In this document: piece by piece, positions 9,753-17,029 of the stretch
Numbering within the stretch: position 1 is the first letter of the stretch
Layout of the letters: every line of letters starts with the position of its first letter
Source of the DNA: Mytilus trossulus
Lineage: Eukaryota
Assembly (NCBI RefSeq): GCF_036588685.1
Contig: NC_086381.1
Location: 73,222,001-73,286,000 of the forward strand
Reading direction: 5' to 3'
DNA length: 64,000 nucleotides
Made by a program: the position numbers and the translations under genes
The notes under the pieces: generated by a model
The model's input: only the letters and a program-made list of their open reading frames with translations
Database searches by the model: none
What the model was told of the DNA's origin: nothing

Positions 9753-12700
9753 TCAATCATACAATGTGGCATTTAAAACTTGTGAGTATATAATATAAGT
9801 ATAGCAAAATATCCCTAGCATAACACTGACAATTATTAGTTTTTTGGCATTATCAGCTTTCGCACGTGCTGAGACATAATCTCCTTCTTCGTGTGCCTGT
9901 TTTGCCTACAAAATAATAATTATAATATTAAATATAATTATTTTTCAGTTTTTTTCGCAAATTAAATATTGAGTGTGTTCAGAGTTCCAAATAAAGCATA
10001 ACCTTATATATAAATATGTGACACTAAACTATGCACTTTGACATCCAAATACTTATTTCGTGTTTGATTTGGGGTATTTAAGGTTTATGACCCCTTCTGT
10101 AGTCAATTTTGTACGAACTTTTGATACTTACATTGTATCAAAACTACAAATATGATAAATAATATATAGATATGCCATTTTGTACACATGCCGAGGGGAA
10201 ACTTGATGCAAAGCATTATTATTTACTGTTTCATTGCACTTTGTGTCAATTAAACCAAGATTTTTATAGAAAATCCACAGCCTTTATCCTTGTACTCTCA
10301 TTTTTTGGCAATTTGATGCCACAAAGAACTCTTTTTCTATTAAATGCAATGAAACAGTAAATAATAATGCTTTGCAGTTAAGTTTCCCCTTGGTATATGT
10401 ACAAAATGACCTATCTTTATTATTCATATGTAGTTTTGATGCAATTAAAGTTTGAAAAGTTCGTACATAAATGACTACAGAAGGGGTCATAAATCTATAT
10501 GAGTGCATGTTGATGGAATATTGTTTAAATAAAGAAGAAAATAGAAGACAATTCAGATGACACAGTAAATACCTATACACATTTTAAAACGGTAAATAGA
10601 ACTACCTTCAACAATGAACAATGATATTTCTAATGTTGATATGTATAGAAAGCACAGTTACCCGCCAAAAGTGATTAATGATATTTAAAACAAAACAGGG
10701 CTCACGAAATAGTGTTACAATTTTTCGTGTACGTTAGAATATTTTTGACGATAAGGGATTTGTTTCCCAATTCTGAAAAAGAGAAAAATCAGAAGAAATG
10801 ATTATCAGGTTGGAAAATCAGTCACATCGGTCCATAATAACCTATTTAACACATAACAGCCCAAAATGGATGATATATATCAAGTGCGGTGCAAATAAGC
10901 ATAACTTTTGAATTTAAAAAAATACTAAAAATTTTATTTTCTATGTCAAAAGAAGTAACTTTGGACAATCGACTTTTCCTGTAAAAATGAAGAAATTCAG
11001 AAAACTGGTCTCTTATAAACAATCTGGTTAAAAGAAAAGTTTCTAAACATTTATTTTTTTTGCCTTTTATGAAATCGTTTTCTCTTTGCATTACTTACCA
11101 TTGAGTCGAAAAAAAAAGTTTACACAGTAAAATTATATAAATACATAAGTTACACAAAAAGTAGATAACCCATTGAAATAAAGCATATTTGTCAGTTTTT
11201 ATAACTTGTCGTTAAAATCGGGGTCACCGAGCCGTGCAGGTTAAATCATATATACCGACTTGCCTGGTCAATAAATATTACCACAAAAAAAACAAGTAAC
11301 TTACACTTCTACTTGCCAATATTGCAACCAATCCGCATGGCCATGCGCAGAAAATACATGCAACTACCGCTGGAAGCGTCCAATCTGGAGGAGGTGTTCT
11401 CTGCATCTGTCTAGCGTTATCTGGTAAAACCTAATAGAGCAGAACGGTTGACGTATTATTTGATGACGGCAATAAAACCTTTGCATATAAGTTATTCAAA
11501 ATGTAACTATAAATTCATAAAATAAAAATTATTATACCGTGAAAATCTTTTTTGAAACGAAAAAAATGCTTTTTACAATACCATGAATTAAAAAAACACT
11601 TTACGACCAGTATTTGAGTTACCAGTAGTTGAATTCTCTCTCTCTACCAAAAATGGTATCTCCTCTTTCATTTACTTATCTCTCTGTTGAGACTCGTTGT
11701 AAAGTTAAGCAGCGTTTATTTATAATCATGTACTTACAACAATACCAACTGGTTTTGGTTGATTGTATACGGGAGGTGGAGGTGGATATCCTTGACCAGA
11801 CGGAGGAGGTGGTTGTGGGTATGGTGGTGGAGGATATCCTTGATCAGTTGGAGGAGGTGGTTGTGTGTATGGTGGTGGAGGATAGGCGGGTGTTGAAGGT
11901 TGTGAAAATCCTTGTCCAGGTGGCGCAAAACCACTTCCGGGAGGTGCAAATCCTGTACCGGGTTGGGCAAAACCCCCGGCAAAACCACTTCCAGGAGGTG
12001 CAAATCCTGTACCGGGTGGAGCAAATCCTTGTCCCGGTGAAGCATATCCACTCATCGGCTGTCCTCGTGTATCCGTTGTAATGGTTCCTGTTGAAATTCA
12101 AATGTTGAACTCAGATAACGAAATTTAACTGACATATACTTTATAGCATCGAGAACTGTTTTAGAAGGCCTGACTATTTGGTCACTATATATCTTTAAAA
12201 TTAAGAATGGAAATGGGAAATGTGTCTTTAAAGAGACAACAACCTGACCAAAGAGCAAACAACATCCGAAGGCCACAGCTGATTCATACAAGTCTATTCC
12301 AAATTCTATACAGAGTTTTATCAAATAGTTTAAGGCATTAGTGCATTTGAGAACATTTGTGTATTTTTCTTAATTGACCATATAGTAAATGAAAACAATT
12401 AAAATTGAAAACCATAAAAAGAAAGATTTCATTTCATGTTCATGTTTTTAAAATTATGAAGAGAGTCTTTTTAAGTTTCACCAAACTTGTCCAACATTTT
12501 TTTCTCGTATGCCTTTTGTATAAATATTGAAATGTGTTTGCTATGTAAGATGAAAAGCAGCATAGCAACATTGACCAATTTCCAGTCTGTCTAACCTCCA
12601 GTGGCAAATACTTCGTGTATATAAGGATGAGGAAAGCAGAATACAACATTAATTAAATCAGAACAATAAAGAAGAGGTATACTCATTCAATATAATATTG

Positions 12701-14039: not shown

Positions 14040-14705
14040 TAAAATTGAGAATGGAAATGGGGAATGTGTCAAAGAGACAACAACCCGACCAAATAAAAAA
14101 AAACAACAGCAGAAGGTCACCAACAGGTCTTCAATGTAGCGAGAAATTGCCGAAGCCGGAGGCGTTCTTCAGCTGGCCTCTTAACAAATATATACTAAAA
14201 AAGTACTAGTTCAGTGATAATGAACGCCATACTAATTTCCAAATTGTTCACAAGAAACTAAAATCAGAATAATACAAGACTAACAAAGGCCAGAGGCTCC
14301 TGACTTGGGACAGGCGCAAAATTGCGGCGGGGTTAAACATGTTTATGAGATCTCAACCCTTACCCTATACCTCTAGTCAATGTAGAAAAGTAAACGCATA
14401 ACAATACGCACATTAAAATTCAGTTCAAGAGCAGTCCGAGTCTGATGTCAGAAGATGCAACCAAAGAAAATAAACAAAATGACAATAATACATAAATAAC
14501 AACAGACTACTAGCAGTTAACTGACATGCCAGCTCCAGACTTCAATTAAACAGACTGAAAGATTATGATTTCATCATATGAACATCAGGCACAATCCTTC
14601 CCGTCAGGGGTTTAGTATCATACCATCATAACATATATGAGAAGAACATAACCCGTGTCATGCCAACAACTGTTTTTATAATAAATGTGTTTAGTTCCGA
14701 CGTAA
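14040..14705 (+). repeat. Dispersed repeat (aaaattgagaatggaaatggggaatgtgtcaaagagacaac family)
   Basis: The terminus is shared with a shorter copy at ~12197-12280. The internal ggctcctgacttgggacaggcgcaaaa motif is related to segments at ~9100-9200, ~13095-13150 and ~16085-16105. Boundaries approximate. Confidence 0.6.
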
Positions 14706-14890
14706 AGAGACTCTAAAAGACCGTTTTAAAACTCGAGAACAGTGAAAGTGTCGACACTTTAATTTCAAAAGTGATCTGAATTTGGAGTCACGGTAATAAC
14801 CATTGTGTACAATTTTATAACACTTAGTTTGAAGACAAACCAGAGAACGGAAAATAAACTCATTATAGATACCAGGACTAAATTAAGTAT

Positions 14891-14936
14891 ACACCAGATG
14901 CGCGTTTCGTCTACAAAAGACTCATCAGTGACGCTC
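14891..14936 (-). ncRNA. Type I hammerhead ribozyme motif (downstream copy; AUC triplet, probably weakened)
   Basis: Minus strand GAGCGTCA CTGATGA GTC TTTTGTA GAC GAAAC GCGC ATC TGGTGT. Stem I GCGUCA/UGGUGU, stem II GUC/GAC, palindromic GCGC loop III. The G of GUC is replaced by A. Confidence 0.7.
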
Positions 14937-15227
14937 AAATCCAAAAAAAGTTAAAAAGGCCAAATAAAGTACGAAGTTGAAGAGTATTGAGGACCAAAAT
15001 TCCTAAAAGTTTGGCCAAATACAGCTAAGGTAATCTATGCCTGAGGTAGAAAAGCCTTAGTATTTCAAAGAAATAATCAAAAATTTGTAAAAAGTAAATT
15101 TATAAATATAACCATATCAATGACAATTCATTTCAGCACAAAAAGTGCTGACTACTGGGCTTCTGATACACTCGGGGAAATAAATCTCTACCAGCAGTGG
15201 CATAGATACCAGGACTAAATTCAGTAT

Positions 15228-15273
15228 ACGCCAGACACACGTTTCGTCTACAAAAGACTCATCAGTGTCGCTC
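15228..15273 (-). ncRNA. Type I hammerhead ribozyme motif (upstream copy; intact core with GUC triplet)
   Basis: Minus strand GAGCGACA CTGATGA GTC TTTTGTA GAC GAAAC GTGT GTC TGGCGT. All core nucleotides are present; predicted cleavage is between 15234 and 15233. Confidence 0.8.
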
Positions 15274-17029
15274 GACCACCAACCTCCGAACCTAAAGACG
15301 GACAAGGGTAAACCTGAATGTCTATACCGCCAATGGGAGGCGGCATACAAACAAAATACTAGTGTCGACTGTAGTAGTAGATAAACTAGTACAACGATAG
15401 CCGCTGCATTAGATGCAACTAATTTGGGACTGATTCACAAATGACGAAATCTAATCCGGGGGTGACTGCATTTCGATGGCAATACCCATCAAGCCAGTTT
15501 CTACTTCTTTGGCAACAACCAAAACCCTAACCCATGTAGCCACTAAATAGGGTGGGGGATAGTGCCCTTGAAAAGAAGGTGTGTCTATACACTGCCCCCA
15601 TCCTACCCCATGGAACTATAAAAAAAGTTTATATGAATAATTAATACCATATGATACACTATCATTGCAGTTGAAGCATGCCTCTAATATAACATAACCC
15701 AGTTTATTACGGTATTGAAGCCAGGTTACTTTGAAGGAGTTGACTGATATGTAAAACTAGGTCCATTCACAACAAAAAACAGTAAAGTGGAAGAACTGCA
15801 TGAAAAGTTTGCGAGTGAAATTACTTATATTTCAAATGAAAAAATGCCCTGAAATTATTATCATATCAAATAATTGATAAACCCTTACATAACTATTTCT
15901 CCTGTGTAGGAATTCATACTTGTAACGTCATGAACTTGCAGGTGTATATCTGCTCAACATCGATCTGATGAGATAGGTAAGCCCTTCTCAACTGATTTTT
16001 ATAGTTTGTTCATGTGTTGTGATGTTACTACACTATAGGGATTTGACTGGGAACCCACAATCAACCCCATCACATTCTTTATGCACCTGTCTAAGTCAGG
16101 AGACAGTATTCAGTGATTGTCGTTTTCTGCTATATTTTATGTGTTTTTTATTTATTATTTTGTACAGAAATTATTATGAAAGTTTGAACTGTTTTGAGCC
16201 TTTTATAGCTGCCTTTGTGGTATGCTTTTTGCTCATTGTACAGCAATATGGGCTATTTTCTATTTCATTTTGTCTCTGGTTGAGAGTTGTCTCATTAGCA
16301 ATCATACTGCATCTTCTTATTTTTTAATATTATACATTTACAAAATGAGTTGCCATGATGTCCACCTATGAAATACGACTTATCCTAATTTAATATCAGT
16401 ACATGAAACTTGATTTGCCATAATATATGACCTGATCCCAACATGACTTTTTCAGTCCATTCCTCATAAATACAAAACAGACATTGAAAAACTGAACATC
16501 ATAAAATACAATATAGAAAACTGAAGAAAAGGTAACAAGAACCCACTTGTAACCTCAGGGGAGTACTGGTGTGCTAAGCTGTGCTTCATAAGACCAGAAG
16601 AACGAAAGCTAGATTTATCCTTGTTAGACGATAACAAAGTGAAAGACTGTGAAGAGGAAGGTAATAACATCAATATTATAATATTACAAACATTTCACTC
16701 ATTTGATGTTGTTGTTGTAATAGTCAATAATTCTGCCAAAGCCTTTGCAAATCTGAGTATATGAACAGTGACAAGCATATCTAGTGAAGCTTTTTGTTCG
16801 AAATTGCAATATGGTTTTCATGATGTCCTATTTTATACTACATGTAGTAAATTATACTGCTCTTGGCTGGCAAGAAATGACAGAATTTCTATGAAGATTC
16901 ACAAATTCCATATGTAATTCCATGGCTAACTTATTTGTTGGTAGTAATTTTCTTGGATGTCATGTGTTATTACCAGATTGACTACGTAATTAGGGCCAAA
17001 GAAGTACAAATTTCTAATATACAGGATTA

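What the first reader, a model, noticed from the sequence alone, without database searches (positions are those of the whole stretch)
14852..15273. Twin hammerhead ribozymes 337 nt apart: a retrozyme unit that could excise itself as a small circular RNA
Seen: two minus-strand motifs with CUGAUGA, a 3-bp stem II, GAAAC, a 4-nt loop III and an NUC triplet, closed by stem I. Predicted cleavage sites 15234/15233 and 14897/14896 would release a 337-nt non-coding monomer. Known: minimal type I hammerheads with a tiny palindromic stem III cleave as dimers and define Penelope-associated and non-LTR retrozyme repeats. Such tandem units giving circRNAs have been reported in metazoans including mussels, so the class itself is not new. 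Inference: the two copies are damaged in different places (AUC with a GCGC loop; GUC with a GUGU loop and one stem I mismatch), so this locus may be partly active or decaying. The left-flank segment aaataaactcat is missing before the second repeat, suggesting a small internal deletion. The element lies about 2 kb upstream of CD225 paralog 2 on the same strand and could sever read-through transcripts.
Basis: partly seen in the sequence, partly recalled or inferred. Interest (0 to 1): 0.8.

Follow-up and report, generated by a model that had tools for sequence, protein, structure and literature searches.

The report
Worn copy of known mussel retrozyme
This is one decayed, apparently silent copy of an abundant and already published kind of small mobile repeat of mussels that carries self-cutting hammerhead RNA motifs, so it is real but ordinary.

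Summary
Two identical 25-nt hammerhead (HHR) cores lie 337 nt apart on the minus strand, with the predicted cleavage sites (none expected by chance). They belong to a 424-nt insertion (15275 to 14852), about 1.16 units of a repeat family with a period of about 365 nt. That family has 4,574 exact cores in this 1.3-Gb genome. In unit size, copy number and HHR type it matches the published mussel non-LTR retrozymes (PMC7229834). This scan has already noted such elements many times on other DNA of this genome.

This copy is worn:
- Each HHR breaks one helix pair.
- It differs from the family majority in 20 of 424 columns.
- It lacks 30 nt.
- It scores 18.8 bits on Rfam type I, against 32.5 for typical family copies.

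In four RNA runs both flanks have zero depth. At eight listed interior sites nearly all reads carry family letters, not this locus's letters.

Excision of a 337-nt circle and severing of CD225 transcripts are not. Interest is low.

The parts
14852..15275 (-). Whole retrozyme insertion: 424 nt, about 1.16 family units, 35.6% G+C. It starts just 5' of HHR copy A and ends at the family's shared 3' terminus.
   Evidence: Coverage by BLAST hits from the 29 other family loci rises from 0 at 15290 (1 at 15280) to 69 at 15270 and falls from 76 at 14860 to 0 at 14850. The commonest HSP ends are 15275 (57 of 108) and 14852 (62 of 108). Unit coordinates are 325 to 47. G+C.
15228..15271 (-). Hammerhead copy A. 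Stem I 5' strand 15271-15266, CUGAUGA 15265-15259, stem II and loop, GAAA, 2-bp stem III with GUGU loop, GUC, cleavage 15234/15233, stem I 3' strand 15233-15228. One stem I pair is broken (A15268 opposite G15231).
   Evidence: Rfam Hammerhead_1 18.8 bits, E 0.17, below the gathering score of 34. Family letters differ at 15268, 15239 and 15237.
14891..14934 (-). Hammerhead copy B. Same core, GCGC loop III, AUC, cleavage 14897/14896. The 15.2-16.2 pair of stem III is broken (C.A), and one stem I G-C pair has become G.U (14893).
   Evidence: Rfam Hammerhead_3 28.4 bits, E 9e-4, below the gathering score of 48.5. The energy of the imposed HHR fold is +0.9 kcal/mol, against -6.7 for a typical family copy.
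14897..15233 (-). The 337-nt stretch between the two predicted cleavage sites, the hypothetical monomer.
   Evidence: Linear fold -78.9 kcal/mol, z -2.27 against 100 shuffles. A natural 365-nt family unit gives z -2.53.
15201..15203 (-). Junction of a 30-nt deletion relative to the family, bounded by a 3-nt microhomology. This explains 337 nt instead of about 365-367 nt.
   Evidence: Alignment with five natural family arrays. The exact 23-nt junction occurs once in the genome, in this locus. RNA reads of family copies carry the undeleted letters (joint 15203 to 14852 with 15 letters between).
14852..14896 (-). 3' tail after copy B's cleavage site, ending at the fixed family terminus (unit coordinate about 47).
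   Evidence: In 29 of 30 loci the array ends at unit coordinate 45-57 (27 of 30 at 45-51). The remaining locus is cut by its own edge. Junction sequences.

Best explanation
Window 15275-14852 (minus strand) is an old retro-insertion, longer than one unit, of a high-copy, non-coding, non-LTR retrozyme family of a mussel-type genome.

In this kind of element, each unit of about 365 nt carries one type I hammerhead. Transcripts of tandem copies cut themselves into unit-length RNAs. A host tRNA ligase circularises these. A retrotransposon reverse transcriptase, most likely from a Penelope-like element, copies the RNA back into DNA. These steps come from the literature and were not shown here.

The family's insertions share one 3' end, about 48 nt past the cleavage site, and have variable 5' ends. 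That is the footprint of reverse transcription primed at a set point and running for a variable length. This insertion covers about 1.16 laps, which is why it holds two hammerheads.

Since insertion, the copy has accumulated 20 differences from the family majority in 424 columns, partly of the CpG-decay type, and a 30-nt microhomology deletion. Each hammerhead has lost one helix pair. The locus is not detectably transcribed. It is best read as an inactive relic, not a working source of a 337-nt circular RNA.
For: **Family membership**
- The 337-nt stretch gives 4,253 first-look candidates in the genome. The 40 that were scored gave long matches that are mostly 91-95% identical.
- There are 4,574 exact 25-nt cores and 0 in the reversed control.
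- Core spacing is about 365 nt in 30 loci.
- G+C is 35.6%.
- Typical family HHRs score 32.5 bits, E 7e-5, on Rfam Hammerhead_1.
- The published mussel description matches in kind: about 5,000 type I HHRs in two related ribozyme families, repeats of 350-390 bp and abundant circRNAs (PMC7229834).

**Insertion footprint**
- The 3' ends lie at unit coordinate 45-57 in 29 of 30 loci, while the 5' ends are scattered over the unit.
- Exact flank repeats of 8-10 nt occur in 3 of 27 loci.

**Decay**
- 20 of 424 columns differ from a family majority of at least 60%. The script scored 4 of the 9 transitions as CpG-type. A further CpG-to-TpG change at 14893 was hidden by gap placement.
- There is a 30-nt deletion, and its junction is unique in the genome.
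- 31 of 46 sampled family HHRs keep all 12 helix pairs, but neither window copy does.

**Silence of the locus**
- Depth is 0 in 14722-14832 and in 15277-15600 in all 4 RNA runs.
- At 15013, between 52 of 58 and 62 of 62 reads carry the family letter.
- At 15189, the figures are 5 of 5, 10 of 11 and 6 of 6.
- At 14985, they are 91 of 96, 84 of 86 and 49 of 59.
- At 14864, they are 65 of 70, 74 of 75 and 66 of 67.
Against: - At 15237, in copy A's loop, most of the few reads carry the window's letter (4 of 5, 14 of 24 and 11 of 12 in X21, X22 and X24). These could come from this locus. They could equally come from other copies with the same recurrent CpG change.
- Only about 6-18% of each raw-read run was read. 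Three individuals or libraries do not cover all tissues.
- The catalytic core letters and the A15.1-U16.1 pair are intact in both copies, so residual cleavage, at least by copy A, cannot be excluded without an assay.
- No target-site duplication was found for this locus (399 of 1,000 shuffles scored as well).
- I did not find the autonomous partner. None of the 38 GIY-YIG (Penelope-type) loci examined carries this family's HHR or tail within its own 3' region.
- Identity with one of the two published mussel HHR families is inferred from size, copy number and type. The sequences are in figures and supplements that I could not see.
Confidence: 0.85

Rival explanations
1. The locus is still partly active. 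Occasional transcripts through it are cut by copy A and, weakly, by copy B, perhaps with the two hammerheads pairing through stem III as a dimer. This would release a 337-nt RNA that is circularised.
For: - Both catalytic cores, both A15.1-U16.1 pairs and both NUC triplets are intact.
- Copy A's imposed HHR fold costs only 1 kcal/mol more than a typical family copy (-5.7 against -6.7).
- Most of the few reads at 15237 carry the window's letter.
Against: - Both flanks have zero RNA depth in 4 of 4 runs. A transcript containing copy A's stem I would need to start at or upstream of 15271, at most 5 nt inside the element.
- Only 1 of 22 reads at 15189 carries the window's letter.
- Copy B's HHR fold is unfavourable (+0.9 kcal/mol).
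- The stem III duplex between copy A and copy B is -6.9 kcal/mol against -13.3 for two typical copies, and it leaves the two pairs next to the core unformed.
Confidence: 0.08
2. The element acts in cis on the CD225-family gene 2.8 kb downstream on the same strand. It would cut read-through transcripts or serve as a boundary or promoter element.
For: It lies on the same strand, 2,797 nt upstream of the putative ATG of a gene with CD225 domain exons.
Against: - No RNA read lies between the element and 14722 in any of the 4 runs, so there is no read-through to cut in these samples.
- The element is one of thousands of dispersed copies, and nothing marks this position as selected.
- The abstract of bioRxiv 10.64898/2026.07.22.740005 reports retrozymes enriched in intergenic DNA in vertebrates.
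Confidence: 0.03
3. The two motifs are chance matches or a plain local duplication with no ribozyme ancestry.
For: Rfam reports nothing at gathering thresholds.
Against: - No chance matches are expected in shuffles.
- The genome holds 4,574 exact cores, with 0 in the reversed control.
- Family copies score within 1.5 bits of the Hammerhead_1 gathering score.
- Helix pairs are kept in 40-46 of 46 sampled copies at each of the 12 positions.
Confidence: 0.01

Closest known systems
Metazoan non-LTR retrozymes of the mussel Mytilus galloprovincialis (Cervera and de la Pena 2020, PMC7229834)
   Same: - Type I hammerhead per unit.
- Unit size: about 365 nt here, 350-390 bp published.
- Thousands of copies: 4,574 exact cores here, plus 14,629 of a sister core.
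- Low G+C (35.6%).
- No LTR, PBS or PPT.
- Short arrays from just over one unit to several units.
- Family-level RNA reads are present.
   Different: - This particular copy is worn. It has a 30-nt deletion and one broken pair in each HHR, and no sign of its own transcription.
- Whether this family of about 365 nt is one of the two published ribozyme families could not be checked letter by letter, because figures and supplements were not available.
- The sister family, with 354-355-nt arrays, fits the published 353-nt construct better in size.
Penelope-like elements and their hammerhead-bearing terminal repeats (pLTR)
   Same: - Hammerhead near the 3' end.
- Partial tandem arrangement with a 5'-truncated upstream copy.
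- Fixed 3' end with a variable 5' end.
- PLEs with GIY-YIG domains co-occur in this genome (149 matches).
- A 2026 preprint argues from vertebrates that retrozymes are non-autonomous PLE derivatives (abstract only).
   Different: - This element has no ORF.
- None of the 38 GIY-YIG loci I examined shares this family's HHR or tail within its own 3' region.
- The PLE hammerheads seen in L072, L075, L055 and L074 have other sequences.
Newt and axolotl satellite 2 hammerhead repeats
   Same: Tandem units of about 330-350 nt, with a type I HHR that has a very short stem III and a palindromic loop.
   Different: - Different sequence and phylum.
- The amphibian HHRs are reported to need dimers for efficient cleavage (PMC7229834).
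- For the mussel, the paper reports slow but real self-cleavage of a cloned genomic repeat.
Plant LTR retrozymes
   Same: Non-autonomous, flanked by two HHRs, expressed as circular RNA.
   Different: Plant elements have type III HHRs inside LTRs of about 350 bp, a PBS and PPT, 4-bp TSDs and G+C above 55% (PMC7229834). None of these features is present here.

Membership tests
Hammerhead ribozyme, type I (Rfam RF00163) | Conserved catalytic core: CUGAUGA, GAAA, the A15.1-U16.1 pair and an NUH cleavage triplet | tested here: met
   Both copies have CUGAUGA, GAAA and A15.1-U16.1, with GUC (copy A) or AUC (copy B).
Hammerhead ribozyme, type I (Rfam RF00163) | Three helices around the core, with stem I open (type I topology) | tested here: inconclusive
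   The topology is type I. Copy A keeps 11 of 12 pairs (stem I A.G). Copy B keeps 11 of 12, but the lost pair is one of only two in stem III. The HHR fold is not the minimum-energy fold of the isolated 51-mers.
Hammerhead ribozyme, type I (Rfam RF00163) | Score at or above Rfam's gathering threshold (34 bits) | tested here: not met
   There are no gathering-level matches in the window. Copy A scores 18.8 bits. Copy B scores best on Hammerhead_3, at 28.4 against a threshold of 48.5. Typical family copies reach 32.5-32.9 bits, also just below the threshold.
Hammerhead ribozyme, type I (Rfam RF00163) | Mg2+-dependent self-cleavage after H17 | not testable with these tools
   This needs in vitro transcription. 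The paper reports cleavage for one cloned mussel genomic repeat, not for this locus.
Metazoan non-LTR retrozyme | Type I HHR inside short tandem repeats of 150-450 bp, from dimers upward | tested here: met
   Spacing is 337 nt here and about 365 nt in the family. Arrays run from about 1 to at least 8 units in the 30 loci.
Metazoan non-LTR retrozyme | Dispersed multicopy family with low G+C (below 45-50%), lacking LTR, PBS and PPT | tested here: met
   There are 4,574 exact cores on both strands across the contigs. G+C is 35.6%. The only terminal repeat is the 72-nt overlap of the unit itself.
Metazoan non-LTR retrozyme | Non-coding | tested here: inconclusive
   Only mechanical ORFs of 59, 49 and 77 aa overlap the element. 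They were not searched against protein libraries.
Metazoan non-LTR retrozyme | Expressed as unit-length linear and circular RNA | tested here: not met
   This verdict is for the locus. Its flanks are silent and reads carry family letters at the window-specific sites of the interior. For the family, reads are present, but circularity cannot be read from short reads because tandem DNA is colinear with a circle junction.
Metazoan non-LTR retrozyme | Retro-insertion marks (target-site duplication where present) | tested here: inconclusive
   Exact flank repeats of 8-10 nt occur in 3 of 27 family loci. None is significant for this locus.

The most novel reading that the evidence does not exclude
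The 30-nt deletion may be a copying scar rather than later damage.

- The deletion spans the family's fixed 3'-end point (unit coordinate about 48), exactly one lap upstream of the insertion's 3' end.
- That is the point where a reverse transcriptase running round a circular template would meet its own starting point.
- Near-identical deletions occur at the same unit position in at least two other independent loci (L066 and the duplicate pair L064/L065). A further locus, L067, shows a messier break at this point.

If true, such scars would be genomic evidence for rolling-circle reverse transcription of retrozyme circles.
Probability: 0.08. Interest if true: 0.4.

Novelty: already known. Interest (0 to 1): 0.12.

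Why it matters
It matters little on its own. It adds one dated, broken copy to a family whose biology is already published: self-cleaving, circular-RNA-forming retroelements of mussels.

Two things are useful by-products:
- A clean negative for this locus. It is not expressed, and both ribozymes are impaired.
- An independent confirmation, on 30 loci, that insertions of this family share one 3' end about 48 nt past the ribozyme cut and have variable 5' ends. This constrains how such elements are copied back into DNA.

Tried and rejected
**Checks that gave nothing or were rejected**
- Rfam at gathering thresholds gave nothing in the window. The matches in E-value mode are below threshold.
- Tandem Repeats Finder found no array here, because there are only 1.16 units.
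- Target-site duplication for this locus: the best local alignment of the two 60-nt flanks is matched by 399 of 1,000 shuffles, so I rejected it.
- Empty-site paralogue: the 285-nt upstream flank is single-copy, so none is available.
- Other copies in the window: none beyond this locus.
- The 'goes back 352' joint in the reads is not a circle junction. It comes from family reads that still hold the 30 nt deleted here. The 'goes back 305' joint carries 32 foreign letters and comes from a related subfamily.
- Strandedness of the RNA: the two mate orientations are roughly equal, so this was not informative.

**Search for the autonomous partner**
- I looked at the 30 best GIY-YIG loci, two 10-kb stretches of a tandem 1,056-aa element, and six more 3' regions.
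- I saw three kinds of Penelope-like 3' end: one ending in (TA)n, one with an N-terminal GIY-YIG and no HHR in view, and one with other HHR sequences.
- None has this family's HHR or tail within its own 3' region.
- The sister-family HHR on the same strand in L048 lies about 900 nt beyond that element's homology boundary, so I read it as a separate insertion.

**Limits on what I could see**
I used linear folds instead.
Natural intact family copies serve as the control.
- Supplementary Figures S4 and S5 of PMC7229834 (mussel HHR families and cloned circles) were closed. They may show whether this exact family is one of the published two.
- Papers seen: passages of PMC7229834; abstract and outline of bioRxiv 10.64898/2026.07.22.740005; search listings only for PMC8557442 and PMC7761336.

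Full report
**Observation.** On the minus strand the window holds two identical 25-nt hammerhead cores, at 15265-15241 and 14928-14904. None of 100 shuffles had even one match. A looser hammerhead pattern finds only these two.

Reading the sequence gives the following for the two copies.

| Feature | Copy A | Copy B |
|---|---|---|
| Stem I 5' strand | 15271-15266 | 14934-14929 |
| Stem II | 4 bp with a 5-nt loop | same |
| Stem III | 2 bp | 2 bp, one pair broken |
| Loop III | GUGU | GCGC |
| Cleavage triplet | GUC | AUC |
| Cut | 15234/15233 | 14897/14896 |

The spacing is 337 nt. The direct repeat around the cores is 72 nt at 92% identity.

**Rfam.** At gathering thresholds nothing is reported in the 64 kb. 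In E-value mode copy A scores 18.8 bits on Hammerhead_1 (gathering score 34, E 0.17). Copy B scores 28.4 bits on Hammerhead_3 (gathering score 48.5, E 9e-4). Typical copies of the same family elsewhere in the genome score 32.5-32.9 bits on Hammerhead_1 (E 5e-5 to 7e-5), just under the threshold. The family motif is thus a bona fide near-threshold type I hammerhead, and the window's copies are degraded versions of it.

**Family.**
- The window's genome (1.30 Gb, 541 contigs) gave 4,253 first-look candidates for the 337-nt stretch. The 40 that were scored gave long matches that are mostly 91-95% identical.
- The exact 25-nt core occurs 4,574 times (2,285 forward, 2,289 reverse), with 0 in the reversed control.
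- In 30 loci the core spacing is about 365 nt.
- A sister core differing by one letter occurs 14,629 times, largely in long arrays of 354-355 nt units.
- The two core types can sit in one array: compare C1:269657 with its neighbours. The core counts therefore do not separate the families perfectly.
- The two families align only over the hammerhead-proximal 120-odd nt, at about 80% identity.

**Boundaries and footprint.** Homology to the family runs from 15275 to 14852 with sharp edges. That is 424 nt, or unit coordinates 325 to 47 when coordinate 1 is the first base after the cut.

- In 29 of 30 loci the array's 3' end lies at unit coordinate 45-57, and in 27 of 30 at 45-51. The remaining locus, L006, is cut by the locus edge.
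- The 5' ends are scattered: 5, 8, 28, 44, 53-67, 93, 119, 176, 211-299, 325, 356-365.
- L023 and L026 overlap one array, and L010 and L015 share flanks. The independent sample is therefore at most 27 loci besides the window.
- Eight arrays have near-integer unit lengths.
- Exact flank repeats of 8-10 nt are present in 3 of 27 loci (L004, L009, L021). None is significant at this locus.

A fixed 3' end with a variable 5' end is the footprint expected of reverse transcription primed at a set point and running for a variable length. On a circular or multimeric template that length can exceed one lap. This is an inference from the footprint.

**State of this copy.**
- Against a family majority of at least 60%, the window differs in 20 of 424 columns: 9 transitions, 7 transversions and 4 small insertions. 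The script scored 4 transitions as CpG-type. One further CpG-to-TpG change, at 14893, was hidden by gap placement.
- It lacks 30 nt next to copy A, bounded by a 3-nt microhomology. This explains 337 nt instead of about 365 nt.
- The exact junction is unique in the genome.
- Of 46 sampled family hammerheads, 31 keep all 12 helix pairs. Copy A breaks stem I pair 3 (A.G). Copy B breaks 15.2-16.2 (C.A), one of only two stem III pairs.
- The imposed hammerhead fold costs -6.7 kcal/mol for a typical copy, -5.7 for copy A and +0.9 for copy B.
- A stem III duplex of two typical copies is -13.3 kcal/mol. For copy A with copy B it is -6.9, and the two core-proximal pairs are left unformed.
- These energies are crude guides, not activity measurements.

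**Expression.** One read-laying run laid three raw-read RNA runs from two studies and one RNA contig set on 14500-15600, at 95% likeness or better.

- Depth is 0 in 14722-14832 and in 15277-15600 in all four runs. No transcript enters or leaves the element here.
- Reads do lie on 14852-15276, but at window-specific sites they carry family letters:

| Site | X21 | X22 | X24 |
|---|---|---|---|
| 14864 | 65 of 70 | 74 of 75 | 66 of 67 |
| 14899 | 36 of 45 | 41 of 48 | 9 of 10 |
| 14985 | 91 of 96 | 84 of 86 | 49 of 59 |
| 15013 | 62 of 62 | 52 of 58 | 49 of 53 |
| 15132 | 3 of 3 | 13 of 13 | 6 of 6 |
| 15163 | 5 of 5 | 4 of 5 | 6 of 6 |
| 15170 | 4 of 4 | 7 of 7 | 3 of 6 |
| 15189 | 5 of 5 | 10 of 11 | 6 of 6 |

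- Against this reading, at 15237 most of the few reads keep the window's letter (4 of 5, 14 of 24, 11 of 12). Another 20 difference rows were not shown by the tool.
- The loose ends at 14852 have heterogeneous continuations (agreement 0.45-0.51). The reads therefore come from many other insertions.
- The 'goes back 352' joint carries the 15 letters that the window has lost, so it is not a circle junction.
- Short reads cannot show circularity for a tandem element in any case.
- Conclusion: the family is transcribed, and this locus is not detectably so in these samples. Only 6-18% of each run was read.

**Context.** A CD225-family gene lies downstream on the same strand.
- A proline-rich first coding exon runs from an ATG at 12055.
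- CD225 domain exons lie at 11430-11281 (PF04505, E 2.5e-5, below the cut-off on its own) and at 9905-9756 (E 1.3e-6, above the cut-off).
- The element ends 2,797 nt upstream of that ATG.
- With no reads between them, nothing supports a role in cutting read-through transcripts.

**Partner.** Penelope-like elements are plentiful: there are 149 GIY-YIG matches. Among the 38 loci examined, none carries this family's hammerhead or tail within its own 3' region. The Penelope link therefore rests on the footprint and on the literature: the discussion of PMC7229834 and the abstract of bioRxiv 10.64898/2026.07.22.740005. Earlier notes of this scan claim such a partner for other retrozyme families of this genome (s1-826654, s1-820559). 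I could not reproduce this for the present family.

**Comparison and verdict.** The element meets the tested defining features of metazoan non-LTR retrozymes: a type I hammerhead in repeats of 150-450 bp, a multicopy dispersed family, low G+C and no LTR features. It fits the published mussel case in size and abundance. The class, the organism group and even this genome's families have been described before. This scan alone holds 292 notes with both words. The specific locus is a decayed, silent copy. The one loose thread is that similar 30-nt deletions spanning the fixed 3'-end point recur at two or three other independent loci. This might be a scar of lap completion on a circular template, but the support is thin. 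Novelty: already known. Interest: low.

Noticed in passing
window 14500-14708: This is a different repeat with high RNA depth (about 100-300 per orientation at the left edge). In all three raw-read runs the reads leave the window at 14708 with one consistent continuation (agreement 0.95-0.97). The window therefore holds a truncated copy of another transcribed element.
   Followed up: no
window 12055-11729, 11430-11281, 9905-9756 (minus strand): A CD225/dispanin-family gene. It has a proline-rich first coding exon, and the CD225 domain is split over two exons (PF04505, E 2.5e-5 and 1.3e-6).
   Followed up: partly
L066 (G000:C10:15931275), L064/L065 (G000:C7:27084845 and 27426730, same flanks), L067 (G000:C13:26202652): Other copies of the family carry deletions of about 30 nt at nearly the same unit position as the window (unit coordinates about 32-62, spanning the fixed 3'-end point). 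They lie in at least two or three independent loci.
   Followed up: partly
L009, L010, L011, L015, L016, L022, L028 and others: The 5' ends of arrays cluster just after the 3'-end point (unit coordinates 44-67). This gives near-integer unit lengths in about 8 of 27 loci. That would fit termination on completing a lap, or a linear template with set ends.
   Followed up: no
G000:C1:269302-292684 and C1:113382-118361: Satellite-like arrays of more than 60 and of 15 units, 354-355 nt each, of the sister hammerhead family (14,629 exact cores genome-wide). One unit of the first array carries the window family's core variant.
   Followed up: no
L061 (G000:C10:30942500-30952499), L062: Young tandem copies (100% identical over 2,377 nt, spacing 4,277 nt) of an element with a 1,056-aa open frame. 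The GIY-YIG domain lies near the N-terminus, the permuted Penelope-like type. An internal tandem repeat of about 255 nt sits between the frames. No canonical hammerhead motif was found.
   Followed up: partly
L047-L051, L031, L038, L050, L054, L059: A Penelope-like family with a C-terminal GIY-YIG domain. Its copies end about 200-250 nt after the stop codon, most of them in a (TA)n tract.
   Followed up: no
L072 and L075 (about 100 nt after the open frame's stop): Penelope-like elements carrying a hammerhead-like motif of a different sequence directly downstream of the open frame.
   Followed up: no
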